Assembly: GCF_046119375.1 (NCBI RefSeq)
Contig: NW_027362764.1
Coordinates: 496,992,001 to 497,056,000, forward strand
Direction of reading: 5' to 3'
Length of the DNA stretch: 64,000 nucleotides
Origin: Phyllobates terribilis
Taxonomy: Eukaryota
A program made the position numbers and the translations under genes. The notes beneath the pieces were generated by a model. That model did not search any database and was not told where the DNA came from. It worked only from the letters and a program-made list of their open reading frames with translations. Below, piece after piece: positions 31,874 through 61,730 of the stretch (positions are counted from its first letter, which is position 1; every line of letters starts with the position of its first letter).

Positions 31874-31929
31874 GTATGACCTTCCTAATCTGTATTCTTC
31901 AGCAATTGTACTGTAGTGTCCATTCTTAA

Positions 31930-34682: not shown

Positions 34683-34908
34683 CACCTGGCGACCCCTGAA
34701 GCTTTTGCCAGGAATCCATCTCGTGTATGGGAGTTTTATCACTATCGTAGGGAAGTGATGCTTACAAAAAGCCCAAACCCAGCACACCTGGCCATCGCAG
34801 AATGTGAATCTCGACTCAGCAAACAGGGAAGGAAAGTAGTGGTGATAACGCAGAATATTGACGAGTTGCATCGCAAGGCAGGAACGCGCAAACTGTATGA
34901 AATTCATG
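34683..34908 (+). CDS. SIRT5: SIRT5 coding exon 3 (226 nt)
   Basis: [75 protein letters not shown]. Contains the YxxR acyl-specificity pair, the QNID motif and the catalytic His. Confidence 0.97.
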
Positions 34909-35248
34909 GTAGGATGGCTCTTTAGTTCATAAACACTCATACCCCCCCTTCCTGTTTGTTTTGGACATAAGGTCCAATATTCTTTGCAATGAGAAAATCT
35001 GAATATGAAAAGACACCACTTTCCCAGTATATTATGGCTCTGCAAATAAAATGGCATGCTGGGACTTGCTGTCAGTCTGCACACCACTGCCCTAAAGTGT
35101 TTCTGATAATACACTCCTCAACATTGAAATTACAACATCAATAAGAAAAAGTCCTGGAATTAAGAAAATCACAGGATGGTTAGACATGTTAATGATCTGC
35201 AAATGATGGAAACAAAATTTTCAGAGTTTCTCTATTTAGTGTAACATA

Positions 35249-36817
35249 CAGCTCTGGCAAAAATTAAGAGACCACTGCACAGTTTTCTAAAAATCCCCAT
35301 CTCTACATGTCTGACAGCCATTCCATTCCAGTGTCAGTTGAATTCCAACCACAGTCCACCTCATTCTACTTAATGTGCTTCTGATTAGGTGATCACCTGA
35401 ACCAAATCTTATGTAACGAGGGAAAGTATAAAAAACACTGCTGTGGTCTTCACAATACTCTTGCAATAGGACAAGCTGGATGGCAAAACAAGTGCTAGGA
35501 ATAGCCTAAAGGTAATTTGAATGAAAAAATAACTTTTAACCATGCCAAAGGAGTTGAAAAGATAAGTCTTGAGTGAGGAAAATGGCTCAATTCTGGCTTT
35601 ACTAGCGGAGGGATACAGTGAGCGTCATGTTGCCTCAATTCTTAAAATTTCGAAGATGGCAGTCCATTACAAAAGGTCAAGCAGCAGACATTGGGGACAA
35701 CAAAGCTACTGACCGGGATGACTGTCATTTTATTCGAATGTCACTCAGCAACCGCAGGATGACATCAAGTGACCTACAAAAGGAATGGCAGCTGGGGTGA
35801 AGCGGAAAGAACAGTTCGTAACAGGCTCCTAGAGGCAGGCCTCAAGTCATGTAAAGCTAGAAAAAAGCCTTTCATCAATGAGAAGCGAAGGAGTGCCAGG
35901 CTGAAGTTTGCCAAAGACCATAAGGATTGGACCATAGAGGACTGGAGTAAGGTAATCTTCTCTGAGTCTAATTTTCAGCTTTGCCCAACACCTGGTCGTC
36001 TAATGGTTAGACGGAGACCTGGAGAAGCATACAAGCCACAGTGTCTTGCACCCACTGTGAAATTTGGTGGAGGATCGGTGATGATCTGGGGATGCTTCAG
36101 CAAGGTTGGAATTGGGCAGGTTAATTATTGCGAAGTACGTATGAATCAAGCTGCATACAAGGTTATCCTTGAAAAACCCTTGCTTCCTTCTGCTCAGGCA
36201 ATGTTCCCCAACTCTGAGGACTGTTTTTTCCAGCAGGACAATGCCCCATGCCACATAGCTAGATCAATCAATGTGTGGATGAAGGAGCACCACATCAAGA
36301 CCCTGTCATGGCCAGCCCAATCTCCAGACCTGAACCCCATTGAAAACCTCTGGAATGTAATCAAGAGGAAGATGGATAGTCATAAGTCATCAAACAAAGA
36401 AGAACTGCTTAAATTTTTGTGCCTGGAGTGGCATAAGGTCATCCAAAAGCAGTGTGAAAGACTGGTGGAAAGCATGCCAAGACGCATGAAAGCTGTGATT
36501 AAAAATCATGGTTATTCCACCAAATATTGATTTCTGAACTCTTCCTGAGTTAAAACATGAGTATTGTTTCTAAATGAATAAGAACTTGTTTTCTTTGCAT
36601 TAATTGAGGTCTGAAAGCACTTTCTTTTTTTATTATTTTGACGATTTCTCATTTGCTACAAATAAATACAAAAGTTTTAGCTTTGAATTTCGGAGACATG
36701 TTGTCAGTAGTTTATAGAATAAAACAATGTACATTTTACTCAAAAATATACCTATAAAGAGAAAAATCAAAGAAAGTGAAAATTTTGCAGTGGTCTCTTA
36801 AATTTTTGCCAGAGCTG
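35249..36817 (+). mobile_element. Full-length Tc1-like transposon in SIRT5 intron 3
   Basis: TA flanks; TIRs CAGCTCTGGCAAAAATTAAGAGACCACTGCA and its reverse complement. Confidence 0.93.
35542..36530 (+). pseudogene. Disrupted Tc1 transposase
   Basis: The ATG at 35542 is followed by an early stop and frameshifts. ORF 35769-36530 has FQQDNAPCH and SPDLNPIENLW, but IFSESNF lacks the first catalytic Asp. Confidence 0.88.
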
Positions 36818-37106
36818 TAAGTGGCACGTGCAGAAATACAGGCACTAACTCACCTTGGCATGCTATCAATGAGGTTAGTAGTGATTGGGAATGTTCCGCC
36901 ATGTTTAATGCAATTGGACATGCAAATCTTCAAGTTTCTTTGCAATTGCTGACCAATTATGTCCCAGATGTGCTCAACGCCACTCTTTTGCGTTAGACAC
37001 TGATTGCTGGAGATTGGTCTGGAAACTACGTGGACAAGACCACAAAGTGGCCTTCACGAGGGAACGTCACACCGATCCTACTCCCTGGGTTATGGTGTGT
37101 GTGTGT

Positions 37107-37137
<31 letters not shown>

Positions 37138-37149
37138 GTTTATGTACGG

Positions 37150-37460
37150 TAGCCAGACCGCTCTAGTCTTCATTCCAGGTATGCTAACAGCTTGACGCTA
37201 CATTGATTTGGTTGTGGAGGTATGGCAATTTCTCAAGTGTCAAAGGAGCTATTTTTCAACACAATGCCAGGCCACATGGTGCTTGTACTACTATGAGCAG
37301 CCTGTGTGGCCTAAATGTGCTACCATGGTCTGCAGTGTCTCTGGACTTGTCACACATCACACATCTGATGTCATTGGTTGGCAATTATAAAGGGGAACTG
37401 CCAACAAGTGATTTGTATGCTTGCGTGTATTCAGCATGGCAGAACATTTCAGACAACTAT
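37150..37460 (+). mobile_element. Old Tc1/mariner transposase remnant
   Basis: Degenerate IFQHNARPH and LPWSAVSLDLSHI motifs in ORF 37203. Confidence 0.5.
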
Positions 37461-37574
37461 TAATACCCACAAGAAGCAAAATGAACAAACCCTGCTGTAA
37501 ATAAAAAGCAAAAGTGCATTTAAATAAAATGGGGTTCTTCGTAACATTGTTTTTGATCAAAAATAGCATGAAAG

Positions 37575-37851
37575 TAGGGTTGAGCGAGTATGCTCGGGCC
37601 GAGCGCCGAGTATTTACCGCTGCTCGGTGATATGGTTGAATTGCTCTCGTGTGCATGATTTGCGACTGTTTGACAGCTTTATTACATGTGAGGAATGTCT
37701 ATTTCTTACACATTCCTCACATGTAATAAAGCTGTCAAACAGTTGCAAATCATGCACACGGGAGCGATTCAACCATATGACCGAGCAGCTATAAATACTC
37801 AGAGCTCGGCCCAAGCATACTCGCCGAAAGGAACATACTCGCTCAACACTA
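37575..37851. mobile_element. Palindromic hAT MITE
   Basis: TAGGGTTGAGCGAGTA ... TACTCGCTCAACACTA with an 8-bp TSD CATGAAAG. Confidence 0.88.
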
Positions 37852-37909
37852 CATGAAAGCTATCCCACCACGGCTAGGTGAACCCATGCAGGATAGTCTT
37901 ACTGTCTAA

Positions 37910-38108
37910 GGCCACGGCCCCACTATCAGTATTTGATCAGTATTCGGTCAGTGTTTTTTCTCAGCCGTGAGAGCCAAAACCAAGAGTGGGTCAAAAATGC
38001 AGAAGTGGTGCACTTTGTTATACCTTTTCTCTGATTGTTCCTCACCTGCTTTTGTCTCCCACTCCTGAGATAAAGTACTGACCAAATAGTGCTAGTGGGG
38101 CCGTGGCC
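37910..38108. mobile_element. Small Harbinger-like MITE
   Basis: TIRs GGCCACGGCCCCACT / AGTGGGGCCGTGGCC. Confidence 0.7.
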
Positions 38109-39533
38109 ATATATTAAAAACCTTACTATTTGTCAAAGTTGACCTCACTGTGTGATTAAGGGCAGACAAAAGATCGGGTCCGAACTGTGGACACCAGCCA
38201 AGGGAAGATTTTAAAATGTATTATTCAGCTGTAGGAAGGGAGGCCACACCCTGGTTTGCACAGAATGCAAAAAATACAAAGCTAAAACACAAAATTTGAA
38301 CTTGGTTTAAGTTGGTATACATGCAGCACATAAATGCATGTTCACAATGGCTATAAATCAGAAAAAACCTACAAGACGCAGAATGAACATAACACATGCT
38401 GTAAATAAATAAAAAGCAAAAGTGCATTTACATAAAATAGGGTTCTTAGTAACACTGTTTTTGCTCAAAAATAGCATAAAAGCTATGGCGTGTAAGTGCG
38501 GGGATTGTGCCGCCCTGGCAGAATACGCCATACTGAATAAAATGGGGTGTTTCGAAAATTTTGCTTCTTTTTTTCAACATATTCATATACTTAATTTATA
38601 TTGGTCCTTTTTAATTTCCTTTAATTTTGAGGACTTTTCCTTCTTGGTGTTACAATTTCAATGTTGATTGTAATTAAAGGGGGTGTCTCTTCTTAGTAAA
38701 TCGTTAAAATGGTAAATTGCTTACAAAAACAATCAACCTTATTTCGTATTATAGTCCTCGCCTTTCTAAAGAACGAAGGGATTTTTAATTCTATAGCTTC
38801 TGCCTTGATGCTTTATAAAAAATATAATCCTCAGCGCTTTAGAATTGATAAGATGGGAACAAGTAAATTTGACAAATGCTTTCTTCCTAAAATAATGTGA
38901 CACTTCTCCTGGGGACAGCTACAATACCAGACATAACCCATGAGCAGATTTGACACTGTTCTTAGAAGATAGCCATGTCTAATCCTGTACATTGCTTAAA
39001 GGGGTTGTCCTTTTAAAAAAAAAAAAAAAAACTCCACTGCTCCCTGGAGTTCTTTGTCAGCGCTGCAGCAGTAATGTCATTGTTGTAACACACGACCATT
39101 GCAGCCAATCACCGGCCTCAGCCAGCTATGATGCCCATAGAAGCCCTAAGGCTGGGGATTGGCTGTTGCATTCATGTGTTGTAGGCAGGATGTCACCGCT
39201 TAAGCCCTATGAACAACTTTGGGATGTGGCAGAGATGTGGCACTGGTCCATCAGGGGATTCAATTAGAAAATAATGTCTGTTTTAATGTTTTTAAGCATT
39301 TAACCTCCCATATGTAAGGAAAGTCCTGAAGAAAAGGGGCCTACCCATGAGCCTGTTGGTGCCGGTGCGTACAGCATTAACATCTTTAGTGAAAAACGAC
39401 TATACACTTGCTGATATTTCAGCGGAGGTATCTAGCTAGCCATAATGTGCCCTAGAAAATTGGTTGTTTCCTGTGGTAGTTGGAAGCAGGACTTCATGTG
39501 AAATGGCTTGTCTGCAATTGGATAACCCCTTAA

Positions 39534-40394
39534 GGCTGCGTGCCCACTATGCGTTTTTACCGTGGAATTTCCGTAGCGAAAACGCTTGGTAATACGTGCC
39601 CCATGGTCCCCAGTGATGCTCCGCATGTGCACATGCGGAAATTTCCACTGCGGATTATCATTGCGGAAAAATACGCAGCATGTCCATTAATTTTGCAGAC
39701 ACGCAGCATAATCGCTACCATTGACTTGCATTGGACCGCGTGACATCCGCATCACTACATCTGCACAAGCGGATATCACACGGTTCAATGTGCGGATGGT
39801 ACCCAGGTCTGGAGAAGAGGAGACTCTCATCCAGACCTGGGTACCATAGAAACTGTAAAAAAAAAAAAAATTAAAATAAAAAATAAAGATTATACTTGCC
39901 TTCCGATGTCCTCCCGGTGTTTTCTCCCCTCCGTCTGGTCTGCTGTATGGGTCGCGGTGTTGTGAAGGACCTGCCATGACGTCATTGAGTCATGTGACCT
40001 GTCACCGTAGATCCTTCACACGACCGCGAGCCGCCCAAGACATCGGACGCAGCAGAGAAAACACCGGGAGGACATTGGAAGGTAAATATAATCTTTATTT
40101 TTTACCATTCTTATTCTTTTTTTTTTTTTTTTTTTTAATAGCTTGGTCACACTATATAAATCCATGCCGGTTGCATGGATTTATATAGTGTGAACAAGTT
40201 GTCAAGCACTTTTCCAAGTGATGCTAAAATCACTTGGAAAAGCGCTTGATAACCCGCATGCAGAAATGCATGAAAAAACACTGGACAAACGCTTCTACCT
40301 GGCAGGAAAAACGCATGTAAAATCCGCATGCGTTTTTTCTGCCAGGGAGAAGCGGAAAAAATATGCAGCATCTCTGCATCGTGGGCGCATAGCC
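39534..40394. mobile_element. Harbinger-like MITE in SIRT5 intron 3, same group as 1418-2370
   Basis: TAA|GGCTGCGTGCCCAC ... GTGGGCGCATAGCC|TTA; shared internal modules; internal palindrome about 39890-40095. Confidence 0.72.
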
Positions 40395-40581
40395 TTAAGG
40401 GACACATGGCTGGTATGTCACAGCTTCTCTGCAAATTTGGGAGTACAGAATTTTTGCATTGATGGATTTCTCATATTCACGATATATACAATAATACAAT
40501 ATTGTAACGACTTGATACAGCCTAAATTAAGCTTGATGTGATTGCGAGCAATTCTTATTAAAGTTATGTGATTTCTTTCAG

Positions 40582-40669
40582 GTAGCTTGTTTAAGACCCG
40601 ATGTAACACTTGTGGCAGTGTGAAGGAAAACTACAAGAGTCCTGTCTGTTCCTCCCTTGAAGGAAAAGG
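40582..40669 (+). CDS. SIRT5: SIRT5 coding exon 4 (88 nt)
   Basis: [30 protein letters not shown], with the first Zn-binding CxxC; phases consistent. Confidence 0.96.
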
Positions 40670-40853
40670 GTAACTTTTGGCTATTTCTGTATTCGTTGTT
40701 GTCTTGGGGTGATTTATTATTGTGCAGTATGTTGATCACCTGCTTGGTATGGATGCCTGTGGTCTCCAGTATAAAAGCATTGACAATCTAGATTGTTCTG
40801 TCTTTGGCCATTGTTAATGATCACACTTACTATTTTTTTTGCACTTTAATTAG

Positions 40854-40907
40854 CGCTCCTGATCCTGAGGTAGAAGATGCTGCTATTCCAGTAGAGGATC
40901 TACCACG
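40854..40907 (+). CDS. SIRT5: SIRT5 coding exon 5 (54 nt)
   Basis: APDPEVEDAAIPVEDLPR; TAG| and |GTGAG boundaries. Confidence 0.95.
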
Positions 40908-42394
40908 GTGAGGACTTCTGTGAAGTAATGTTTCTGCATTCTTTGGTCATATGCAGTTTTTTGGCATTTCCTCCAACTATATGAACCACTTTATCAGTAA
41001 AAATAAACTTCCTTATGTTAGGAAATACAAATGATCATTTGGAGCTGAAAACAACTTTGGTTTGATCTTTTAAAAGCTTTGAATACATTTGCAACCTTTT
41101 TATAATTGCCAAACTAAATGCTCTACATAGTCTTCGTGAAAGACTTGCTTCCATTTTGCTGCTGTAGTGTCTGCGCAACTGCTTCATATAGCTGGTTTTG
41201 CTGCTGTTTGACATGGATCTGATGACGTTTTCTCCTGGAGATATAAGTAGGGAAGTAAACCCTACCTCCCCCTGCAGACTGTGTATTGAGGGAAGATGAC
41301 ACCCAAAGTCTGCAGGGGGAGGTAGGGCTCACACTCGCAATACCATCAGTGTAGAGAGGACAGAATCTGTAGGTGGGTGAGATCACACAGTGTTGGCACA
41401 GATAATAAGTGGTAACTGTCCAAGGCTGCAGCATAGGAATAAAGCCTTGCAATGGTAGCTGCACCTGATTTCACAGACTTAATGCCAAGTATGTATTACT
41501 GGGATGGATATGGCCACAAGAGCCAAAACTAGAAGCAAGCTACAGTCTGCATATCTGGGTCTAAAAAAGTAACTGAACTCACAGCCTGACAATTAGTGCA
41601 ATTTAACCACTTGCATATGTAAAAATATATATATTTTTTACATTTTAAAGGTGTCCACAGCCTTGCAAAGTACTACATGTACAATCTTACCACAAATGAA
41701 TATTTACATTGGATAGTATTTGTGAAATGTATGGTGTCTATTTAGTCTGTAATATATTATGTACTGTAAATTAATACCCCCCCCCCTTTTTTTTTTTTTT
41801 TGGTCACTTTCAAAAAGTTAGTTGCATGCTTGATTAGCTGGAGTTAACCTGATATTCAGACACTTGCTGGATCCATCTGGATACCATATTGTAATTTTTA
41901 ATGATTATGCCTTTCTTGGAAGAAAAAAGACATATAAAGCAAATGTATGCGGGAAAATTTCAGGATTTAAAAAATGATTCCTAATTGATAGAACAGGTGT
42001 GAAATAACAAAATCAGATAGTACTTGCTCTCACCAGGTCCTTCTCTGCATTGGTGACATCATGTTGACAGCTCACATCACTGCTGCCGAGCTCAGTGGCT
42101 CATCCCATCTATCTTGGTCAAGCTGCTGAGCTCAGTGATTTACTGCAGCTTGATGTGAGCTGATGTCACCGCTGCAGCCAAAACACCAAGATCAGAGCAG
42201 CTGCGGAGATCTGCTGCTAGATCCGGAGTGGGTGAGTACTATATGATTGTTATTTTATGACAAATGTTTGGAATCTACCTCTTTTACTGCCTGAAACTTC
42301 CATTTGTGTTTTACATTTTCTGCATTGTATCTTCCAGAGAGAATAGTGGAGGTAAACGTGCTATAATCTAATGAAATTTTTCATCTGTGTGCAG

Positions 42395-42518
42395 TTGTGA
42401 AGAAAAGGACTGCAGTGGCCTCTTACGACCAAATGTGGTGTGGTTTGGGGAGACCTTGGACTCAAATCTCCTAGGAGAGGTGGAAAAAGAGTTGGAAATT
42501 TGTGACTTGTGCTTGGTG
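42395..42518 (+). CDS. SIRT5: SIRT5 coding exon 6 (124 nt)
   Basis: [41 protein letters not shown], with the second Zn-binding Cys pair and the RPxVVWFGE motif. Confidence 0.97.
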
Positions 42519-42799
42519 GTAAGTAGGGAAATCCAAGACCTGGTAAATACAGCACCATAATAAAAACATGTTGCAATGTACATATACTGGATAGGTAACG
42601 AACATATGGAATGACTCTCTCCATATACATCAATTATTTTTATGTGTTCATTAAATGTGATACTGTTATTGCAATTGAAAAAGTTACCAAATACCTCAAT
42701 CAAATGTCTTCTATCTGGCTGTTCCAGATGAATACATCTACCACATATTTGATAAATCGTCGTCAAAATATGGCTCTGACATACTGTCCTCCTGTGCAG

Positions 42800-42915
42800 G
42801 TTGGAACGTCTTCTGTCGTCTATCCTGCTGCCATGTTTGCACCACAAGTGGCTGCAAGAGGGGTACCTGTAGCTGAGTTCAACATGGAAAGCACCCCAGC
42901 GACACTGGGCTTCAC
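42800..42915 (+). CDS. SIRT5: SIRT5 coding exon 7 (116 nt)
   Basis: [39 protein letters not shown], with the GTS and EFN motifs. Confidence 0.97.
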
Positions 42916-43289
42916 GTAAGTAATATTTGCATTGAATTTCAAAAAGAAGGTTCTGAGCTTTGCATGCTATATATGGGGCAGGGAAAGAATGGTTGGTTCG
43001 TGAAGTTACTGTGTTAAAACAGAGGAAAATGGGGAAACTCGAGGATCTAGGCAATTTTGACAGTCAGTTTGTGATGGTTAGATGACTGGGTTAGAGCATC
43101 TCCAAAAAAAAGCAAGTCTTATGGTGTTGTTCCTGGTATGCAGTGGTTGGTAGATACTAAGAGTGGTCCAAAGTACCGCCAATGAACCTGTGATGGGGTC
43201 ATGAGCAACCAAGGCTTTTTTTTATGTCATTGGGAGTGAAGGTTGGTCCAATCCCAGAGAAGAGCTCTTATTGCTGTTAATAAAAAAAA

Positions 43290-43640
43290 ATGCTGGGTGT
43301 AATAGAAAGTTGCCGGAATATGCAGTGCATCACAGCGTGCTGTGTACAGAACTGCGTATATGCAGACTGGTCAAAGTGTCCATGTTGATTCCTGTCCATT
43401 GCCAAAAGCACCTACAGTGGGCATGTGAGCATCACTACTGGACCATGGAGCAATGGAAGAATGTGGCCTGTCTTGATGAATCATACACTTTCAGATCATG
43501 TGGACGGCGTGGCATTTATGAAGATGTTACTTTGACATGTAGCTCATATATAAACATAATACAAAATATACCCCATAATAGCAGCAAAATTTCCTAATGG
43601 CAATAACCTTTTTCAGAAGGATAATGTACACATGCATACT
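43290..43640 (+). mobile_element. Old Tc1 transposase remnant
   Basis: Degenerate LQWACEHHYWTMEQWKNVACLDES motif. Confidence 0.5.
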
Positions 43641-43776
43641 GCAAACCGTTTTCATTAATGGTATTAGGTACGTACTAATTGTCCCATATTTGGGGGGGGG
43701 GAATCCTTCCTGACTCCTCATACGACATTCGGACTAGCTCCCAGAATCAACGTTACATTGTTGTATCTCACTGTTA

Positions 43777-44990
43777 CAGTGGCTTTTGAAAGTATTCACA
43801 CCTACCTTTACCTATTTTGTCACATTACAACCTGTGTTTTACATATCTTTGTCATCCGATTTGTGTGTGATGCGTCAGCACTAAGTAGTCTAAGTTGGTG
43901 AAGTGAGAAAAACATTGGCTTAAATTTGAAATCAAATAACTAAAAATTGGCATGTGCATATTCACCCCTTTTGTGATGAAGTCCCTAAAAATTTCTGGTG
44001 CAAGCAGTTCCCTTCAGAAGTCACATCCTTTGTGAAAGGAAGTCCACCTGTGTACAATCTGTGTCACATGGTCTGTCGGTATATACACATCTTTTCTGAT
44101 AGGCCACAGAGGCTGCTATGGCATTAAGCAAGAGGCACCACTAACCAAACACCATGAAGGCCAAGGAGATCTCCAAACAAATCAGGGACAAAGTTGGGGT
44201 TGAGTTTTATATATTAAAATAATATCTCAATCTCTGATAATCCCCCGGAGCATCATCAAATCCATTATCCTCAAATGGAAAGAACATTGGTACCACAACA
44301 AACCTGCCAAAAGGGCTGCGCACCAAAACACTGCTCACCAAAATGCCCTCCTTGCCTGGGCAAGGAGGGCATTAGTTAATCACTTCAACAGCAGGATGTG
44401 GGATGTTTTTTTCAATTCAGGTACAGGGAAAATGGTCCCAGTTGAGGGGAAGATGGATGGTGCGAAATACAGGGATATTCTTGAGCAAAACCGGTTTGTC
44501 TGTCAGTGATTTTACTGGGAAGGTGGTTCACCTTCCAACAAGACAATGACACAAAGCATACTGCTAAGAGCAACACTTTGAGTGGTTTAAGGGGAAACGT
44601 CTATATGTTTGGAGTGGCCTAGTCAAAGCCCAGACATGAATCCAATTGATAATCTGTGGTCAGACTTGAAGATTACTGTTCACCAGAGGAAACCATCTAA
44701 CTTGAAGGAGCTGGCGCAGTTTTCCTTGAGGAAAGGGCAAAAACACCAGTGGCAAGATGTGGAAAGCTGAGACTTTTCCAAAGTGACTTGCAGCTGTAAT
44801 TGCCGCAAAAGGAGGCTCTACAAAGTACTGACTTCTGGGGGTGAATAGTTATGCACACTGAAGTTTTCAGTAATTTTGTCCAATAAAAAAAAACAAAAAA
44901 CAAATGTTCAGTTGTAGGCATGTTCTTTACATGAACTGATGCAAACCCTCAAAAAAAAAAGTGAAATCCAGGTTGTGAGGCAGCAAAACA
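43777..44990 (+). mobile_element. Degraded, internally deleted Tc1-like element
   Basis: TA|CAGTGGCTTTTGAAAGTATTCAC start; transposase remnants ([20 protein letters not shown]); no clear right TIR. Confidence 0.75.
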
Positions 44991-45324
44991 CGGTATGTTC
45001 TACTAGGAAATAGAGGGCCATTATCACTGAGCCATTTTTTTTCCACTAGTCTCAACATTCTAATTTTATGTGGCCCCATATCAAACTTTATTTAATATAT
45101 TTAGAAATCCTCTATGATGCAGTCAGATTTCCACAAACTCGCACAATGAAAAAGTTTGAGAAATTTTGTTCTCCATCTTCTCCTCAGTGTGCACCTGTTC
45201 TCTTTTCCGAGAGAATCTGTTCACCCTATGCTGACACTCTGATCACATTTTCATCATTGTCATTTGCATAATTCACCCTATTCTCTCGAATGAGAGAATC
45301 TACGACTGTCCGACCGTAACCTAA

Positions 45325-45428
45325 AGGGGAATCTGTCGACACAAAATGACTGTTCAAACCAGATCACAGCCGCTTGTCTTCCATCTACTGTTTGGTTTGA
45401 ACAGTCATTTTGTGCTGTCAGATTGCCC
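45325..45428. mobile_element. 104-bp hairpin MITE (T2-like) in the last SIRT5 intron
   Basis: GGGAATCTGTCGACACAAAATGACTGTTCAAACCA mirrored by TGGTTTGAACAGTCATTTTGTGCTGTCAGATTGCCC; TTAA right flank. Confidence 0.75.
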
Positions 45429-45616
45429 TTAATCTGTCCATGCACTTTAGATGGCTCATGCACATTAATTAAAATGGCGAGAGGGGAATAAGCTGCTACT
45501 AAACCCTTCTGGAACAAATGATTTGACTTTGCCTGCCATATACACATTCTATATAATGGTGCGTTATACATTTTGATTTGCCCAAAACAGTGATTTCTTT
45601 TTTTTTTTTTGCTTAG

Positions 45617-45692
45617 GTTTCATTTCCAGGGACCCTGTGGAACAACTTTGCCTCCAGCACTTGCTCGCCATGAGACAGAGTTCATCTCTTGA
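45617..45692 (+). CDS. SIRT5: SIRT5 last coding exon (76 nt, including the TGA)
   Basis: [24 protein letters not shown]. The eight exons sum to 930 nt = 309 aa plus stop. Confidence 0.96.
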
Positions 45693-52431: not shown

Positions 52432-54422
52432 CACTGCAGCGCTCCTCCCCTGCAGCAGAGTGCGCACCTTCATTGTGGTTTTCCGTACACAGCAGCGCTC
52501 CTCCCCTGCAGCAGAGGGCGAACCTTCATTGTGGTTTTCCGTACACTGCAGCGCTCCTCCGGTGCAGCAGAGGGCGCTCCTGCATTGTGGTTTTCCGTAC
52601 ACTGCAGCGCTCCTCCCCTGCAGCAGAGTGCGCACCTTCATTGTGGTTTTCCGTACACAGCAGCGCTCCTCCCCTGCAGCAGAGGGCGCACCTTCATTGT
52701 GGTTTTCCGTACACTGCAGCGTTCCTCCCGTGCAGCAGAGGGCGCACCTTCATTGTGGTTTTCCGTACACTGCAGCATTCCTCCCGTGCAGCAGAGGGCG
52801 CTCCTGCATTGTGGTTTTCCGTACACTGCAGCGTTCCTCCCGTGCAGCAGAGGGCGCACCTTCATTGTGGTTTTCCGTACACTGCAGCGTTCCTCCCGTG
52901 CAGCAGAGGGCGCACCTTCATTGTGGTTTTCCGTACACAGCAGCGCTCCTCCCCTGCAGCAGAGGGCGCTCCTGCATTGTGGTTTTCCGTACACTGCAGC
53001 GCTTCTACCCTGCAGCAGAGGGCGCTCCTGCATTGTGGTTTTCCGTACACTGCAGCGCTTCTACCCTGCAGCAGAGGGCGCTCCTGCATTGTGGTTTTCC
53101 GTACACTGCAGCGTTCCTCCAGTGCAGCAGAGGGCGCACCTGCATTGTGGTTTTCCGTACACTGCAGCGTTCCTCCAGTGCAGCAGAGGGCGCTCCTGCA
53201 TTGTGGTTTTCCGTACACTGCAGCGCTCCTCCCCTGCAGCAGAGGGCGCACCTTCATTGTGGTTTTCCGTACACAGCAGCGTTCTTCCAGTGCAGCAGAG
53301 GGCGCTCCTGCATTGTGGTTTTCCGTACACTGCAGCGTTCCTCCAGTGCAGCAGAGGGCGCTCCTGCATTGTGGTTTTCCGTACACTGCAGCGTTCCTCC
53401 GGTGCAGCAGAGGGCGCTCCTGCATTGTGGTTTTCCGTACACTGCAGCGTTCCTCCGGTGCAGCAGAGGGCGCTCCTGCATTGTGGTTTTCCGTACATTG
53501 CAGCGGTCCTCCCAGCAGCAGAGGGCGCACCTGCATTGTAACTGTCCTTACACAGCAGCGTTCCTCCACTGCAGCAGAGGGCGCTCCTGCATTGTGGTTT
53601 TCCGTACACTGCAGCGTTCCTCCAGTGCAGCAGAGGGCGCTCCTGCATTGTAGTTTTCCGTACACTGCAGCGTTCCTCCAGTGCAGCAGAGGGCGCTCCT
53701 GCATTGTGGTTTTCCGTACACTGCAGCGTTCCTCCAGTGCAGCAGAGGGCGCTCCTGCATTGTGGTTTTCCGTACACTGCAGCGTTCCTCCGGTGCAGCA
53801 GAGGGCGCTCCTGCATTGTGGTTTTCCGTACACTGCAGCGTTCCTCCAGTGCAACAGAGGACGCTCCTGCATTGTAGTTTTCCGTACACTGCAGCGTTCC
53901 TCCGGTGCAGCAGAGGGCGCTCCTGCATTGTGGTTTTCCGTACATTGCAGCGGTCCTCCCTGCAGCAGAGGGCGCACCTGCATTGTAACTGTCCTTACAC
54001 AGCAGCGTTCCTCCAGTGCAGCAGGGGGCGCACCTGCATTGTGGGTTTCCGTACACTGCAGCGTTCCTCCAGTGCAGCAGAGGGCGCTCCTGCATTGTGG
54101 TTTTCCGTACACTGCAGCGGTCCTCCCTGCAGCAGAGGGCGCTCCTGCATTGTAACTTTCCGTACACTGCAGCGGTCCTCCCTGCAGCAGAGGGCGCTCC
54201 TGCATTGTAACTTTCCGTACACTGCAGCGGTCCTCCCTGCAGCAGAGGGCGCTCCTGCATTGTGGTTTTCCGTACACTGCAGCGCTCCTCCCCTGCAGCA
54301 GAGGGCGCTGCTGCATTGTAACTTTCCGTACACTGCAGCACTCCTCACATGTAGCAGAGGGCGCTCCTGCAGTGTAGCGTTAGAAGACTTGCAGCGCTCC
54401 TCCCGTGCAGCAGAGGGCGCTC
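52432..54422 (+). repeat. 56-bp minisatellite, about 35 copies, with a CTCF-like motif in nearly every unit
   Basis: Unit GCAGCAGAGGGCGCTCCTGCATTGTGGTTTTCCGTACACTGCAGCGTTCCTCCAGT; period 56 (53404 to 53460). Confidence 0.96.
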
Positions 54423-54511
54423 TACGTTCACTATCACGTCGATCACACTGGTGCAGGTTGTTGGTTTCTGGTCTTCCTCTTCCGGTGGTCAGCTGACGTT
54501 TGCGGAGAAGC
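54423..54511 (+). promoter_or_regulatory. NOL7: Minimal unique NOL7 core promoter / 5' UTR
   Basis: ETS/GABP-like CTTCCGG (54479-54485) and CRE-like TGACGT (54494-54499) within the roughly 90 bp between the array and the ATG. Confidence 0.55.
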
Positions 54512-54630
54512 ATGACTCCTGAGCACGAACTGGAGAGTGAGGAGGATGAAGCGCCGGAGGAGGTGACCTTCCACAGCGCTAAGAGCCGGGCGGAGGAGAG
54601 TGCGCGGGTCAGACGGGAGGCGGCCAGCAG
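54512..54630 (+). CDS. NOL7: NOL7 (nucleolar protein 7) first coding exon (119 nt); later exons lie beyond the window
   Basis: MTPEHELESEEDEAPEEVTFHSAKSRAEESARVRREAASR matches the remembered NOL7 motif DEAPEELTF. Donor AG|GTAAGA at 54631. Synteny downstream of SIRT5. Confidence 0.85.
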
Positions 54631-54769
54631 GTAAGAGGGCACATATCACCGAGCTTTCCGGTGGTTGCAGACGCGTGTATTTTCTAGTGATCGGCTGACC
54701 AACGGGTCGTATGCTCTAGGTAAGTGTGATGTGTGGTCCCTCAGCAGCACTCATCTATGTAACATGTCA

Positions 54770-57700
54770 TCCTGAGTGACCGGCAGGGGGAGCCGCGTGT
54801 GTAATGTATCACATCCCGAGAGTAACCGGCAGGGGGAGCCACGTGTGTAATGTATCACATCCCGAGAGTGACCGGCAGGGGGAGCCACGTGTGTAATGTA
54901 TCACATCCCGAGAGTGACTGGCAGGGGGAGCTGCGTGTGTAATGTATCACATCCCGAGAGTGACCGGCAGGGGGCGCTACGTGTGTAATGTATCACATCC
55001 CGAGAGTAACCGGCAGGGGGAGCCACGTGTGTAATGTATCACATCCCGAGAGTGACCGGCAGGGGGAGCCACGTGTGTAATGTATCACATCCTGAGAGTG
55101 ACCGGCAGGGGGCGCTACGTGTGTAATGTATCACATCCCGAGAGTGACTGGCAGGGGGCGCTGCGTGTGTAATGTATCACATCCCGAGAGCGACCGGCAG
55201 GGGGAGCTGCGTGTGTAATGTATCACATCCCGAGAGTGACCAGCAGGGGGAGCTGCGTGTGTAATGTATCACATCCTGAGAGTGACCGGCAGGGGGAGCT
55301 GCGTGTGTAATGTATCACATCCTGAGAGTGACCGGCAGGGGGAGCTGCGTGTGTAATGTATCACATCCCGAGAGTGACCGGCAGGGGGAGCTGTGTGTGT
55401 AATGTATCACATCCCGAGAGTGACCGGCAGGGGGAGCCGCGTGTGTAATGTATCACATCCCGAGAGTGACCGGCAGGGGGCGCTACGTGTGTAATGTATC
55501 ACATCCCGAGAGTAACCGGCAGGGGGAGCCACGTGTGTAATGTATCACATCCCGAGAGTGACCGGCAGGGGGCGCTGCGTGTGTAATGTATCACATCCCG
55601 AGAGTGACCGGCAGGGGGAGCCGCGTGTGTAATGTATCACATCCCGAGAGTGACCGGCAGGGGGAGCTGCGTGTGTAATGTATCGCATCCTGAGAGTGAC
55701 CGGCAGGGGGCGCTGCGTGTGTAATGTATCGCATCCCGAGAGTGACCGGCAGGGGGCGCTGCGTGTGTAATGTATCGCATCCTGAGAGTGACCGGCAGGG
55801 GGCGCTGCGTGTGTAATGTATCGCATCCCGAGAGTGACCGGCAGGGGGAGCCGCGTGTGTAATGTATCGCATCCCGAGAGTGACCGGCAGGGGGAGCCGC
55901 GTGTGTAATGTATCGCATCCCGAGAGTGACCGGCAGGGGGAGCCACGTGTGTAATGTATCACATCCCGAGAGTGACTGGCAGGGGGAGCCGCGTGTGTAA
56001 TGTATCACATCCCGAGAGTGACCGGCAGGGGGCGCTGCGTGTGTAATGTATCACATCCCGAGAGTGACCGGCAGGGGGAGCCGCGTGTGTAATGTATCAC
56101 ATCCCGAGAGTGACCGGCAGGGGGAGCTGTGTGTGTAATGTATCACATCCCGAGAGTGACCGGCAGGGGGAGCCGCGTGTGTAATGTATCACATCCCGAG
56201 AGTGACCGGCAGGGGGAGCCGCGTGTGTAATGTATCGCATCCTGAGAGTGACCGGCAGGGGGAGCTGCGTGTGTAATGTATCGCATCCTGAGAGTGACCG
56301 GCAGGGGGCGCTGCGTGTGTAATGTATCGCATCCCGAGAGTGACCGGCAGGGGGAGCTGCGTGTGTAATGTATCACATCCCGAGAGTGACCGGCAGGGGG
56401 AGCCGCGTGTGTAATGTATCACATCCCGAGAGTGACCGGCAGGGGGAGCCGCGTGTGTAATGTATCACATCCCGAGAGTGACCGGCAGGGGGAGCCGCGT
56501 GTGTAATGTATCACATCCCGAGAGTGACCGGCAGGGGGAGCCGCGTGTGTAATGTATCACATCCCGAGAGTGACCGGCAGGGGGAGCCGCGTGTGTAATG
56601 TATCACATCCCGAGAGTGACCGGCAGGGGGCGCTGCGTGTGTAATGTATCACATCCCGAGAGTGACCGGCAGGGGGAGCCGCGTGTGTAATGTATCACAT
56701 CCCGAGAGTGACCGGCAGGGGGAGCTGTGTGTGTAATGTATCACATCCCGAGAGTGACCGGCAGGGGGAGCCACGTGTGTAATGTATCACATCCCGAGAG
56801 TGACCGGCAGGGGGAGCCGCGTGTGTAATGTATCACATCCCGAGAGTGACTGGCAGGGGGAGCTGCGTGTGTAATGTATCACATCCCGAGAGTGACCGGC
56901 AGGGGGCGCTGCGTGTGTAATGTATCACATCCCGAGAGTGACCGGCAGGGGGAGCCGCGTGTGTAATGTATCACATCCCGAGAGTGACCAGCAGGGGGAG
57001 CTGTGTGTGTAATGTATCACATCCCGAGAGTGACCGGCAGGGGGAGCTGCGTGTGTAATGTATCACATCCCGAGAGTGACCAGCAGGGGGAGCTGCGTGT
57101 GTAATGTATCACATCCCGAGAGTGACCAGCAGGGGGAGCTGTGTGTGTAATGTATCACATCCCGAGAGTGACCAGCAGGGGGAGCCGCGTGTGTAATGTA
57201 TCACATCCCGAGAGTGACTGGCAGGGGGCGCTGTGTGTGTAATGTATTTCATCCTCAGGGAGAGCTGTGTGTGTAATGTATCACATCCCGAGAGTGACCG
57301 GCAGGGGGAGCTGTGTGTGTAATGTATCACATCCCGAGAGTGACCGGCAGGGGGAGCTGTGTGTGTAATGTATCACATCCCGAGAGTGACCGGCAGGGGG
57401 AGCTGTGTGTGTAATGTATCACATCCCGAGAGTGACCGGCAGGGGGAGCTGTGTGTGTAATGTATCACATCCCGAGAGTGACCGGCAGGGGGAGCCACGT
57501 GTGTAATGTATCACATCCTGAGAGTGACCAGCAGGGGGAGCTGTGTGTGTAATGTATCACATCCCGAGAGTGACCGGCAGGGGGAGCTGCGTGTGTAATG
57601 TATCACATCCCGAGAGTGACCAGCAGGGGGAGCTGTGTGTGTAATGTATCACATCCCGAGAGTGACCAGCAGGGGGAGCCGCGTGTGTAATGTATCACAT

Positions 57701-60700
57701 CCCGAGAGTGACTGGCAGGGGGCGCTGTGTGTGTAATGTATTTCATCCTCAGGGAGAGCTGTGTGTGTAATGTATCACATCCCGAGAGTGACCGGCAGGG
57801 GGAGCTGTGTGTGTAATGTATCACATCCCGAGAGTGACCGGCAGGGGGAGCTGCGTGTGTAATGTATCACATCCCGAGAGTGACCGGCAGGGGGAGCTGC
57901 GTGTGTAATGTATCACATCCCGAGAGTGACCAGCAGGGGGAGCTGTGTGTGTAATGTATCACATCCCGAGAGTGACCAGCAGGGGGAGCCGCGTGTGTAA
58001 TGTATCACATCCCGAGAGTGACTGGCAGGGGGCGCTGTGTGTGTAATGTATTTCATCCTCAGGGAGAGCTGTGTGTGTAATGTATCACATCCCGAGAGTG
58101 ACCGGCAGGGGGAGCTGTGTGTGTAATGTATCACATCCCGAGAGTGACCGGCAGGGGGAGCCGCGTGTGTAATGTATCACATCCCGAGAGTGACCGGCAG
58201 GGGGAGCCACGTGTGTAATGTATCACATCCTGAGAGTGACCGGCAGGGGGCGCTACGTGTGTAATGTATCACATCCCGAGAGTGACTGGCAGGGGGCGCT
58301 GCGTGTGTAATGTATCACATCCCGAGAGCGACCGGCAGGGGGAGCTGCGTGTGTAATGTATCACATCCCGAGAGTGACCAGCAGGGGGAGCTGCGTGTGT
58401 AATGTATCACATCCTGAGAGTGACCGGCAGGGGGAGCTGCGTGTGTAATGTATCACATCCTGAGAGTGACCGGCAGGGGGAGCTGCGTGTGTAATGTATC
58501 ACATCCCGAGAGTGACCGGCAGGGGGCGCTGCGTGTGTAATGTATCACATCCCGAGAGTGACCAGCAGGGGGAGCCACGTGTGTAATGTATCACATCCCG
58601 AGAGTGACCGGCAGGGGGAGCCACGTGTGTAATGTATCACATCCTGAGAGTGACCGGCAGGGGGAGCTGCGTGTGTAATGTATCACATCCCGAGAGTGAC
58701 CGGCAGGGGGAGCCACGTGTGTAATGTATCACATCCTGAGAGTGACCGGCAGGGGGCGCTACGTGTGTAATGTATCACATCCCGAGAGTGACTGGCAGGG
58801 GGCGCTGCGTGTGTAATGTATCACATCCCGAGAGCGACCGGCAGGGGGAGCTGCGTGTGTAATGTATCACATCCCGAGAGTGACCAGCAGGGGGAGCTGC
58901 GTGTGTAATGTATCACATCCTGAGAGTGACCGGCAGGGGGAGCTGCGTGTGTAATGTATCACATCCTGAGAGTGACCGGCAGGGGGAGCTGCGTGTGTAA
59001 TGTATCACATCCCGAGAGTGACCGGCAGGGGGCGCTGCGTGTGTAATGTATCACATCCCGAGAGTGACCAGCAGGGGGAGCTGTGTGTGTAATGTATCAC
59101 ATCCCGAGAGTGACCGGCAGGGGGAGCTGCGTGTGTAATGTATCACATCCCGAGAGTGACCAGCAGGGGGAGCTGTGTGTGTAATGTATCACATCCCGAG
59201 AGTGACCAGCAGGGGGAGCCGCGTGTGTAATGTATCACATCCCGAGAGTGACTGGCAGGGGGCGCTGTGTGTGTAATGTATTTCATCCTCAGGGAGAGCT
59301 GTGTGTGTAATGTATCACATCCCGAGAGTGACCGGCAGGGGGAGCTGTGTGTGTAATGTATCACATCCCGAGAGTGACCGGCAGGGGGAGCTGCGTGTGT
59401 AATGTATCACATCCCGAGAGTGACTGGCAGGGGGCGCTGTGTGTGTAATGTATTTCATCCTCAGGGAGAGCTGTGTGTGTAATGTATCACATCCCGAGAG
59501 TGACCGGCAGGGGGAGCTGCGTGTGTAATGTATCACATCCTGAGAGTGACCGGCAGGGGGAGCTGCGTGTGTAATGTATCACATCCCGAGAGTGACCGGC
59601 AGGGGGCGCTGCGTGTGTAATGTATCACATCCCGAGAGTGACCAGCAGGGGGAGCTGTGTGTGTAATGTATCACATCCCGAGAGTGACCGGCAGGGGGAG
59701 CTGCGTGTGTAATGTATCACATCCCGAGAGTGACCAGCAGGGGGAGCTGTGTGTGTAATGTATCACATCCCGAGAGTGACCAGCAGGGGGAGCCGCGTGT
59801 GTAATGTATCACATCCCGAGAGTGACTGGCAGGGGGCGCTGTGTGTGTAATGTATTTCATCCTCAGGGAGAGCTGTGTGTGTAATGTATCACATCCCGAG
59901 AGTGACCGGCAGGGGGAGCTGCGTGTGTAATGTATCACATCCCGAGAGTGACCAGCAGGGGGAGCTGTGTGTGTAATGTATCACATCCCGAGAGTGACCA
60001 GCAGGGGGAGCCGCGTGTGTAATGTATCACATCCCGAGAGTGACTGGCAGGGGGCGCTGTGTGTGTAATGTATTTCATCCTCAGGGAGAGCTGTGTGTGT
60101 AATGTATCACATCCTGAGAGTGACCGGCAGGGGGAGCTGCGTGTGTAATGTATCACATCCCGAGAGTGACCGGCAGGGGGCGCTGCGTGTGTAATGTATC
60201 ACATCCCGAGAGTGACCAGCAGGGGGAGCTGTGTGTGTAATGTATCACATCCCGAGAGTGACCGGCAGGGGGAGCTGCGTGTGTAATGTATCACATCCTG
60301 AGAGTGACCGGCAGGGGGAGCTGCGTGTGTAATGTATCACATCCTGAGAGTGACCGGCAGGGGGAGCTGCGTGTGTAATGTATCACATCCCGAGAGTGAC
60401 CGGCAGGGGGCGCTGCGTGTGTAATGTATCACATCCCGAGAGTGACCAGCAGGGGGAGCTGTGTGTGTAATGTATCACATCCCGAGAGTGACCGGCAGGG
60501 GGAGCTGCGTGTGTAATGTATCACATCCCGAGAGTGACCAGCAGGGGGAGCTGTGTGTGTAATGTATCACATCCCGAGAGTGACCAGCAGGGGGAGCCGC
60601 GTGTGTAATGTATCACATCCCGAGAGTGACTGGCAGGGGGCGCTGTGTGTGTAATGTATTTCATCCTCAGGGAGAGCTGTGTGTGTAATGTATCACATCC

Positions 60701-60803
60701 CGAGAGTGACCGGCAGGGGGAGCTGTGTGTGTAATGTATCACATCCCAAGAGTGACCAGCAGGGGGCGCTTTGTGTGTAATGTATTTCATCCTCAGGGGG
60801 AGC
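54770..60803 (+). repeat. 46-bp minisatellite, about 130 copies, in NOL7 intron 1, with a CTCF-like core per unit
   Basis: Unit GTGACC(G/A)GCAGGGGG(A/C)GC(C/T)GCGTGTGTAATGTATCACATCCCGAGA; period 46 (56161 to 56207); occasional 34-bp variant units. Confidence 0.97.
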
Positions 60804-60877: not shown

Positions 60878-61657
60878 GCTGCAGAAACGCTTAAAAAACG
60901 CATGGTAGAAGGCCTGCCATGTTCCCCAATGATAATCCGCATGTGCTGTGTACATGCTGCGGAAATTTCCGCTGCAGGTTATCATTGCGGGAAAAAAACG
61001 CAGCACTACCAATTATTTTGCGGGAGCGCTGCGTTTTCGCCGCCATTGACTTGCATTGGAACGCATGGATTCCGCAAGACTGCCTCTGTACATGCGGAAT
61101 CCAAGCGTTTCAATGTGCGGATGGTACCCGGGTGTGGAGGAGAGGAGACTCTCCTCTGGACCAGGGTACCATAGAACCTGTAAAAAAAAAAAAATGGCCC
61201 CCGCTGCGCTTGTATTTCCTTGCCGGCAGCTCACGGACTGAAGGACCTTCGCTGACGTCATAGTCATGTGACGGCAGGTCCTTCAGTGTAGTCTACCGCG
61301 ATCTGCCGGCAAGGAAGGACGGAGCGAAGCAAGACTGCGGGGGCCATCGGAAGGTAAGTATATATTTATTTTTTACCATTCTTTCGGTCACAGTATATAA
61401 ATCCATGCCGGTTGCATGGATTTATATCGTGTGACCAAGTTGACAAGCACTTTCCAAGTGATGCTAAAATCGCTTGGAAAGCGCTTGTCAACCTGCATGA
61501 GGAAATGCAAGTGAAGAACGCTTCACATCCGCATGTCCCTGGCAGGAAAACGCATGTACAATCCGCATGTACAATCCGCATGCGTTTTTTCTGCCAGGGA
61601 GATGCAGAAACGCTCAGGAAAAAATCCGGAGCATTTCTACATCGTGGGCACATAGCC
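60878..61657. mobile_element. Harbinger-like MITE, inverted relative to 1418-2370, with a rearranged left end
   Basis: Right TIR CGTGGGCACATAGCC|TAA; highly similar to the reverse complement of 1418-2370. Confidence 0.8.
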
Positions 61658-61730
61658 TAAGAAACAGACTGTAGTAAGAGTTTATCTATCTGCAATGAAC
61701 TATTTTACAGACTGGCTCACCAGTACTTAA

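What the first reader, a model, noticed from the sequence alone, without database searches (positions are those of the whole stretch)
52432..60803. NOL7 exon 1 is enclosed by two unrelated, co-oriented CTCF-motif tandem arrays: candidate repeat-built super-insulator
Seen: a 119-nt first coding exon and about 90 bp of unique promoter are flanked by 2 kb of a 56-bp repeat and 6 kb of a 46-bp repeat. The two units share little besides the CTCF-like core CAGCAG(A/G)GGGCGC, on the + strand in both arrays, giving up to about 165 same-orientation sites. Established: clustered, co-oriented CTCF sites block cohesin extrusion directionally (IgH 3' CBE cluster, DXZ4, Pcdh). Inference: two independent amplifications converged on CTCF sites at a housekeeping ribosome-biogenesis promoter. 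They may form a copy-number-variable, methylation-switchable boundary between SIRT5 and the NOL7 side.
Basis: partly seen in the sequence, partly recalled or inferred. Interest (0 to 1): 0.82.

Follow-up and report, generated by a model that had tools for sequence, protein, structure and literature searches.

The report
CTCF-motif minisatellites flanking NOL7 exon 1
Two unrelated tandem-repeat arrays sit on either side of the first exon of a frog NOL7 gene, and almost every repeat unit carries a strong same-strand match to the CTCF binding motif, far more often than chance allows; whether they bind CTCF or insulate anything is untested.

Summary
The sequence observation holds. A 56-bp x36 array (52432-54422) and a 46-bp x133 array (54774-60803) flank NOL7 exon 1. 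RNA contigs confirm the exon: TSS about 54477-54487, ATG 54512, splice donor after 54630.

A CTCF weight matrix finds 153 sites at p<1e-5. All are on the + strand. None occur in the window's five other arrays. Dinucleotide shuffles of the units reach the observed scores in 7e-4 (A) and 1.2e-4 (B) of trials. Outside a 12-nt core the two units are unrelated.

The functional reading is untested, and some evidence goes against full occupancy:
- Core columns vary no less than the rest of the unit.
- Variation in B is nearly all CpG decay, and it increases away from the promoter.
- B's usual motif has a CpG at the methylation-sensitive position 2.

One point in favour: a related species carries a 56-bp repeat whose motif half is 32/33 identical to A while the other half is 15/23.

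First readers noted CTCF-like arrays at about ten other loci in this genome. None of those was checked here.

Verdict: a new member of a known kind (CTCF-motif tandem repeats), of moderate interest.

The parts
31721..45692 (+). SIRT5 coding exons seen in the window. These are the [15 protein letters not shown] exon at 31721-31876, exons at about 42.4 and 42.8 kb, and the last coding exon ending with a stop at 45692.
   Evidence: Motif search in the six-frame translation. PDB search gave SIRT5 at E=1.8e-22.
52432..54422 (+). Array A: a 56-bp minisatellite of about 36 copies, GC 0.60, CpG o/e 0.64. It has 31 sites at p<1e-5 (usual core GCAGCAGAGGGCGCT, 14-17.7 bits), all on the + strand. It ends 55-65 bp upstream of the NOL7 TSS.
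   Evidence: No RNA contig depth over its last unit in run X6.
54423..54476 (+). Unique core promoter of NOL7. It has no significant similarity to either repeat unit.
54477..54630 (+). NOL7 exon 1. The 5' ends of the RNA contigs are at 54477 and 54487, over an ETS-like CTTCCGG at 54479-54485. The ATG is at 54512, the CDS is 54512-54630 (119 nt), and the donor GT is at 54631.
   Evidence: Bud21/NOL7 were the only PDB hits. (a 1704-nt RNA contig at depth 442, with a loose end after 54630).
54631..54773 (+). Unique start of intron 1. RNA depth here is 2.5, against 442 in the exon.
54774..60803 (+). Array B: a 46-bp minisatellite of about 133 copies in NOL7 intron 1, GC 0.575. It has 122 sites at p<1e-5 and 111 at p<1e-6 (19.6-23.4 bits), all on the + strand. 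Eight truncated 34-bp units in the distal part lack the 5' half of the motif. CpG o/e falls from 0.82-0.96 in the first 2 kb to 0.57-0.75 distally.
60895..61660 (+). A hAT-like MITE copy next to array B, with a diverged or missing 5' terminal repeat. It is not the source of the B unit.
   Evidence: Other copies lie at 1415-2326 (- strand) and 39579-40399 (+ strand).

Best explanation
These are two locus-specific, GC-rich minisatellites (VNTR-type arrays). They grew independently by unequal exchange or replication slippage, one on each side of the NOL7 transcription start. Array A is in the proximal upstream region. Array B is 143 bp into intron 1. Each amplified a short unit that contains a real CTCF-class motif, so the locus carries about 150 co-oriented CTCF-competent sequences facing downstream into NOL7.

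Most likely mechanism (inferred, not shown): CTCF can occupy copies that are unmethylated, mainly those inside the promoter's CpG-island zone (the end of A and the first ~2 kb of B). That would give a promoter-anchored, rightward-facing CTCF cluster. The bulk of the arrays, especially the distal 4 kb of B, is methylated in the germline, is decaying at CpGs, and is functionally passive. Array length reflects repeat dynamics, not selection for 150 sites.

Shown: the arrays, the motif content, the orientation, the lack of relation between the units, the gene model and the CpG gradient.

Inferred: binding, methylation state and any architectural effect.
For: - Arrays and coordinates.
- PWM hits: A 31 and B 122 at p<1e-5, none on the - strand, none in five other arrays of the window, and 4 in 44 kb of non-array DNA.
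- The IUPAC consensus at one mismatch or fewer gives 69 matches against 0.61 expected.
- Unit shuffles reach the observed score in 7e-4 (A) and 1.2e-4 (B) of 200,000 trials.
- The units are not alignable outside the 12-nt core: the shuffle fraction reaching the observed score is 0.41, and 0.93 for the non-core remainder.
- Neither unit occurs elsewhere in the window, and the array borders are sharp.
- Variation among B copies is nearly all CpG to TpG/CpA: 100% transitions at CpG columns, which vary about 5-fold more than other columns.
- CpG per unit falls with distance from the promoter (Spearman rho -0.40, p=5e-6).
- TSS and splicing come from RNA contigs.
- A contig from related organism C shows a tandem 56-bp repeat. 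Its motif-bearing 33 nt is 32/33 identical to A and the remaining 23 nt is about 15/23 (Fisher p=0.002).
- Frog CTCF uses the vertebrate motif, with convergent orientation at TAD borders, in X. tropicalis (PMC8270788).
Against: - There are no occupancy, methylation or contact data.
Its consensus is right and the tool-based IUPAC scan agrees, but the exact bit scores are approximate.
- Core columns are no more conserved among copies than the rest of the unit. A: 0.040 against 0.039. B: 0.041 against 0.003, that is, the core is more variable.
- The CpG gradient could instead reflect different ages of sub-arrays. Neighbouring units are not independent, so the p-value is overstated.
- The organism C evidence is one 86-nt contig of unknown locus.
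- Motif-rich satellites can lack CTCF signal. Human alpha-satellite higher-order repeats are an example (bioRxiv 10.64898/2026.07.18.739380).
Confidence: 0.5

Rival explanations
1. The arrays are a selected, repeat-built insulator or loop anchor. Many copies are occupied by CTCF, stall cohesin directionally, and separate the SIRT5 side from the NOL7 side. Strength would be tuned by copy number and methylation.
For: - Two unrelated units both carry strong co-oriented motifs. Joint chance is about 1e-7 given composition.
- The motif half of the A-type unit is conserved in another species while the other half diverged.
- In B, the CpG at motif positions 2-3 has decayed mostly to the motif-improving CCAG (26 copies) and less often to the motif-destroying CTGG (14). 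The other CpGs decayed almost only to TpG (24:0 and 18:1).
- Multiple tandem CTCF sites insulate better than single ones (PMC12885311).
- DXZ4/Dxz4 is a precedent (titles and abstracts).
Against: - There is no per-copy constraint on the core.
- The variant counts reflect a few events spread by higher-order repeats (11 of the 14 CTGG copies share one 19-mer), so they carry little statistical weight.
- CpG decay in the distal part of B suggests germline methylation at the methylation-sensitive position 2.
- The arrays are tandem, not convergent, so nothing is enclosed.
- The upstream (ZF9-11) module typical of insulator-type sites is only partly present in A (CTGCAG..TTCC with a 2-nt insertion) and absent in B (one search compared).
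- In DNA run X7, summed depth on the arrays equals only about 10-12 copies' worth of the promoter depth. This observation is ambiguous.
Confidence: 0.15
2. Incidental motif. G-rich minisatellite cores arise at promoter or CpG-island recombination and instability hotspots. Here they happen to resemble the CTCF core, and the arrays are methylated or nucleosomal and not bound in vivo.
For: - About 30% of the window is minisatellite, so arrays near a promoter are common here.
- 0.5-0.7% of composition-matched shuffled units reach p<1e-5, and the finding was picked after the fact from many windows.
- CpG decay is seen within the arrays.
- Motif-rich human satellites can lack CTCF signal.
Against: - The observed scores are far above the loose threshold, and two adjacent unrelated arrays on the same strand is about 1e-7 by shuffles.
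- Five other arrays in the same window score nothing.
- The motif half is preferentially conserved across species.
Confidence: 0.27
3. Another DNA-binding protein, not CTCF, reads the repeats. Candidates are a lineage-specific zinc-finger protein, or ETS/E2F-type factors on the TTTTCCGT segment of unit A. Array A would then act as a multi-copy proximal promoter element of NOL7.
For: - A ends only 55-65 bp from the TSS, and the TSS itself lies on an ETS-like CTTCCGG.
- The non-core part of B (columns 22-46) is almost invariant among copies.
Against: - No matrix for other factors was tested.
- The only element the two unrelated units share is the CTCF-class core.
- In organism C, the half of unit A that diverged is the half containing TTTTCCGT.
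Confidence: 0.08

Closest known systems
DXZ4/Dxz4 and other CTCF-binding macrosatellites
   Same: A tandem array in which every unit carries a CTCF site in one orientation. In those cases binding depends on methylation and chromatin state, and orientation sets the direction of contacts (abstracts of PMC3491370 and bioRxiv 10.1101/165340).
   Different: Units there are kilobases long and X-linked, and binding has been shown by experiment. Here the units are 46 and 56 bp, the locus is an autosomal-type housekeeping promoter, and there are no binding data.
Human VNTRs and satellites with predicted CTCF motifs (HRNR VNTR; gamma satellites, rDNA, some alpha-satellite higher-order repeats)
   Same: [quoted passage not shown] There is motif enrichment over GC-matched nulls, and methylation-dependent accessibility (bioRxiv 10.64898/2026.07.18.739380).
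   Different: The motif density here is much higher, at one strong site per 46-56 bp. There are two unrelated arrays side by side around one TSS, and the organism is an amphibian. Some of the human motif-rich arrays show no CTCF signal.
Clustered co-oriented CTCF sites at boundaries (IgH 3' CBEs, Pcdh, alpha-globin, Sox2 insulator screens)
   Same: Several same-orientation sites add up in insulation strength, and the core faces into the loop (PMC12885311).
   Different: Those are a few to about ten unique sites, spaced hundreds of bp to kb apart and individually conserved. They often carry the upstream ZF9-11 motif. Here there are about 150 near-identical copies with no per-copy constraint.
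TE-driven CTCF-site expansion (e.g. SINE B2 in rodents)
   Same: Lineage-specific multiplication of CTCF motifs by a repeat mechanism.
   Different: The multiplication here is in situ and tandem, not dispersed. Neither unit occurs elsewhere in the window, and the adjacent MITE does not contain the unit.

Membership tests
Minisatellite / VNTR | Head-to-tail units of about 10-100 bp in arrays of 0.5 kb to several kb | tested here: met
   56 bp x35.6 and 46 bp x132.9, with 91-92% matches.
Minisatellite / VNTR | Copy-number polymorphism between individuals | tested here: inconclusive
   In DNA run X7 (another sample), summed array depth over unique depth is about 10-12, against 36 and 133 copies in the window. 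In RNA run X6 the ratio for B is about 100. This could be polymorphism or an enrichment library.
CTCF-site cluster / repeat-built insulator | Match to the vertebrate CTCF core motif, above chance | tested here: met
   The weight matrix was recalled from memory; the IUPAC scan is tool-based.
CTCF-site cluster / repeat-built insulator | Uniform orientation of the sites | tested here: met
   All 153-158 array sites are on the + strand and none is on the - strand.
CTCF-site cluster / repeat-built insulator | Upstream ZF9-11 motif (CTGCAGTTCC-like), a 5-10 bp linker away from the core, typical of insulator-grade sites | tested here: inconclusive
   Unit A has CTGCAGCG(T/C)TCC 6 nt upstream of the core. 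Both halves of the motif are present, but with a 2-nt insertion. Unit B has nothing similar. The comparison is with the consensus and IL3 site quoted, and no matrix was scored.
CTCF-site cluster / repeat-built insulator | In vivo CTCF and cohesin occupancy | not testable with these tools
   No ChIP or CUT&RUN data are accessible, and library types of the runs are hidden.
CTCF-site cluster / repeat-built insulator | Contact boundary or stripe in Hi-C | not testable with these tools
   No contact data are available.
CTCF-site cluster / repeat-built insulator | Unmethylated state of the position-2 CpG | tested here: inconclusive
   B's usual core CCGG has a CpG at position 2. 40 of 125 copies have lost it to CCAG or CTGG, and CpG o/e declines distally. 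This points to germline methylation of at least the distal part. No direct methylation data exist.
CpG-island promoter | GC above 0.55 and CpG o/e above 0.6 around an active TSS | tested here: met
   A 0.60/0.64, unique segment 0.56/0.86, B 0.575/0.75, against 0.41/0.21 in the 2 kb to the left. The TSS comes from RNA contigs.
TE-borne CTCF expansion | The unit is part of a dispersed element with copies elsewhere | tested here: not met
   No hits of either unit outside its own array in the window. The adjacent MITE aligns only from about 60895 and lacks the unit. The test covers only this 64-kb window.

The most novel reading that the evidence does not exclude
In this frog lineage, CTCF sites are systematically multiplied in situ into promoter-flanking minisatellites. 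This would be a tandem route of CTCF-site expansion comparable to the SINE-driven waves in mammals. It might arise because bound CTCF/cohesin sites are prone to breakage and unequal repair, or because arrays of sites are favoured as robust promoter anchors. NOL7 would be a locus where this happened twice independently, with the motif half of the unit kept under constraint across species.
Probability: 0.2. Interest if true: 0.75.

Novelty: new member of a known kind. Interest (0 to 1): 0.45.

Why it matters
If the arrays are bound, this locus would be a natural copy-number series of co-oriented CTCF sites wrapped around a strongly expressed promoter. That would help answer how the number, spacing (46 or 56 bp) and methylation of sites translate into cohesin stalling.

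If CTCF-motif minisatellites prove enriched across this genome, they would point to a repeat-based mode of CTCF-site birth outside mammals. They might also link CTCF occupancy to minisatellite instability.

If the arrays are unbound, the locus is a clear warning that motif density alone does not predict architecture.

Tried and rejected
- **Common origin of the two units:** rejected. Local alignment is no better than shuffles, and the non-core remainder is worse than average.
not supported. Promoter against unit A gives a shuffle fraction of 0.24, and the other flanks give 0.09-0.68.
- **TE origin:** the right flank of B is a hAT-like MITE with two other copies in the window, but it does not contain the unit.
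- **Coding repeat:** array A is open in several frames on both strands, with ORFs up to 560 aa. This is a mechanical property of a stop-free unit, and RNA depth over the end of A is 0.
- **Structured RNA:** no Rfam family matches in 51.5-62 kb.
- **Exon 2:** the spliced continuation is not in the window, so intron 1 is longer than 9.4 kb.
- **Look-up of the B unit in earlier scan notes by sequence:** blank.
- **Literature on CTCF tandem arrays in frogs:** nothing specific was found.
- **Per-copy purifying selection on the core:** not seen.


Full report
**What is there**

Tandem Repeats Finder reports a 56-bp array at 52432-54422 (35.6 copies, 92% matches). It also reports a 46-bp array at 54774-60792 (132.9 copies, 91% matches), with a terminal 126-bp higher-order unit reaching 60803.

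Both arrays are GC-rich (0.58-0.60), in contrast to 0.36-0.46 in the surrounding DNA. Array B has a strong G-over-C skew.

The 351-bp unique interval between them holds an ATG at 54512 and a 119-nt open stretch ending in a GT donor at 54631.

**Gene model**

The 39 aa of this exon hit only three of 177,635 PDB sequences: yeast Bud21/Utp16 (two entries) and human NOL7. All three align at the acidic D/E-APEE segment. Each hit is weak on its own (E 0.3-0.5), but they are unanimous.

RNA contigs settle the matter:
- A 1704-nt contig in run X6 (depth 442) ends at 54487 on its 5' side. After 54630 it runs into sequence that is not in the window.
- A second RNA contig (X10) starts at 54477.
- Intron depth is 2.5.

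The TSS is therefore at about 54477-54487, on an ETS-like CTTCCGG. Array A ends only 55-65 bp upstream of it, and array B begins 143 bp into intron 1.

SIRT5 is upstream on the same strand. One exon matches SIRT5 at E=1.8e-22, and the last coding exon stops at 45692. Array A therefore starts 6.7 kb after the SIRT5 stop codon.

**The motif claim**

The substance of the claim survives, however. Its consensus TGGCCACCAGGGGGCGCTA is the familiar one. The results:

| Region | Sites at p<1e-5 | Notes |
|---|---|---|
| Array A | 31 | all + strand |
| Array B | 122 | 111 also pass p<1e-6; all + strand |
| Five other minisatellites in the window | 0 | |
| 44 kb of non-array DNA | 4 | |

Usual copy scores are 15.6-16.1 bits in A and 19.6-23 bits in B, out of a maximum of 27.9. 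B is therefore the better match, not the worse one.

A tool-only check with the IUPAC consensus CCASYAGRKGGCRSY at one mismatch or fewer gives 69 matches against 0.61 expected. Of these, 66 are in the arrays and all of those are on the + strand.

Because an array is one unit copied many times, the fair null is per unit. Among 200,000 dinucleotide-preserving shuffles of each unit, 7e-4 (A) and 1.2e-4 (B) reach the observed score. Between 0.5% and 0.7% reach p<1e-5.

**Are the two arrays independent?**

Local alignment of the units finds only the 12-mer GCAG[AG]GGG[CA]GCT. Its score is matched by 41% of shuffles. The non-core remainders align worse than average shuffles.

Neither unit occurs elsewhere in the window. 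The flanks show no significant similarity to the units, so the idea that A was amplified from the promoter is not supported.

The right flank of B is a hAT-like MITE with two other copies in the window, and it does not contain the unit.

Two unrelated arrays with strong motifs on the same strand is about 1e-7 by the shuffle rates. That remains small even after allowing for after-the-fact selection among a few thousand array pairs.

**Evidence bearing on function**

*Constraint among copies.* There is none on the core. Minor-allele frequency at non-CpG core columns equals that of the rest of the unit in A (0.040 against 0.039). It is higher than the rest in B (0.041 against 0.003).

*CpG decay.* Variation in B is nearly all CpG to TpG/CpA. 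CpG columns are about 5-fold more variable, and 100% of their changes are transitions.

The affected CpGs include the one inside the motif. CCGG is the ancestral-looking majority, 26 copies are CCAG (a better motif, with the CpG lost) and 14 are CTGG (motif damaged). This CpG is at position 2 of the core, where methylation inhibits CTCF binding in vitro (review PMC8084297).

*Gradient.* CpG o/e in B is 0.82-0.96 over the first 2 kb next to the promoter and 0.57-0.75 over the distal 4 kb (Spearman rho -0.40, p=5e-6). Mean motif score stays flat. I read this as a promoter CpG island reaching into the proximal part of B, with germline methylation beyond it. An age difference between sub-arrays would also explain it, and the p-value is overstated because neighbouring units are not independent.

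*Cross-species hint.* A contig from organism C (run X15) matches 54390-54422, the motif-bearing 33 nt of unit A, with one difference. On both sides it is flanked by the same 23-24 nt. It is therefore a tandem 56-bp repeat whose other half matches A at only about 15 of 23 positions (Fisher p=0.002). This is the best evidence for constraint on the motif half. It rests on one 86-nt contig of unknown locus.

*Upstream module.* Insulator-grade CTCF sites often carry a CTGCAGTTCC-like motif a 5-10 bp linker upstream of the core (PMC12885311). Unit A has CTGCAGCG(T/C)TCC 6 nt upstream of its core. Both halves are present, but with a 2-nt insertion, so the result is inconclusive. Unit B has nothing similar.

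Both arrays face the same way, so they do not enclose the exon as a loop. They would act as one broad anchor with the promoter inside it.

**An unexplained observation**

In RNA run X6, the summed depth on the first B unit over the unique intron depth is about 100. This fits 100-130 intronic copies.

In DNA run X7, from another sample, the same ratio is about 11.5 for B and about 10 for A. X7 contigs also carry Tn5/Nextera ends around a 117-bp promoter fragment.

There are three possible readings:
- X7 is an accessibility-type library whose signal covers only about 0.5 kb of each array next to the promoter. This would fit my reading.
- That individual has much shorter arrays.
- Contig depth sums mislead.

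I could not resolve this.

**Context**

About 30% of this window is minisatellite, so arrays next to a promoter are not rare in this genome.

First readers of this scan flagged CTCF-like tandem arrays at about ten other loci of the same genome, mostly beside promoters. These notes are unverified and I could not read those loci.

X. tropicalis uses the vertebrate CTCF motif, with convergent orientation at TAD borders (PMC8270788).

Tandem repeats carrying CTCF motifs are a known kind:
- DXZ4/Dxz4.
- The human HRNR VNTR, where predicted sites scale with repeat length (PMC10234305).
- Gamma satellites, rDNA and some alpha-satellite higher-order repeats. The last of these have motifs but no DiMeLo-seq signal.

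I found no paper on such arrays in amphibians.

**Verdict**

The most likely account is two independent promoter-flanking minisatellites that each amplified a CTCF-competent site. Binding would plausibly be limited to unmethylated copies near the TSS. The rest of the arrays would be carried along by repeat dynamics.

The 'super-insulator' reading is possible but has no direct support, and several indirect points count against full occupancy.

The finding is a new member of a known kind and of moderate interest. The genome-wide version of the idea is the more interesting one, and it can be tested cheaply with a motif scan of all arrays and the assembly's own methylation calls.

Noticed in passing
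window 2632-8105, 13255-13729, 15999-17162, 18147-19506, 20193-23246: Five further minisatellite arrays (49, 15/27, 31, 57 and 20 bp units). Together with A and B they make up about 19.5 kb, or 30% of the window. None has a CTCF-class motif at p<1e-5.
   Followed up: partly
window 1415-2326 (-), 39579-40399 (+), 60895-61660 (+): Three copies of a roughly 0.8-0.9 kb hAT-like MITE with TAGGCTGTGTGCCCAC-type terminal repeats. Two of them lie with the same end next to a large array: the 49-bp array at 2632 and array B, which ends at 60803. This adjacency may not be a coincidence.
   Followed up: partly
window 26045 (+), 47262 (+), 41263 (-), 50561 (-): Four single-copy CTCF-class motif matches at p<1e-5 (19.2, 17.9, 13.6 and 15.4 bits). 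They lie in SIRT5 introns and in the SIRT5-NOL7 intergenic region.
   Followed up: no
window 54390-54422, contig of run X15 (organism C): A related species carries a tandem 56-bp repeat whose motif-bearing half is 32/33 identical to unit A, while the other half is about 65% identical. Its locus in that species is unknown.
   Followed up: partly
window 54375-54815, run X7: DNA contigs from another sample have Tn5/Nextera adapter ends around 54499-54615. Summed array depth equals only about 10-12 copies' worth of the unique depth. This points to an enrichment library or to much shorter arrays in that individual.
   Followed up: no
window 57222-60700: Eight truncated 34-bp units, each lacking 12 nt that include the 5' half of the motif, are scattered through the distal part of array B only. 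They form part of a 126-bp higher-order repeat (46+46+34).
   Followed up: partly
window 52403-54496: Array A is free of stop codons in several frames on both strands, with ORFs up to 560 aa. This is a mechanical effect of the unit, and no RNA covers the end of A.
   Followed up: yes
window 54643: An A>C difference in the intron in both an RNA run (X6) and a DNA run (X7) from other samples. It is an ordinary polymorphism.
   Followed up: no
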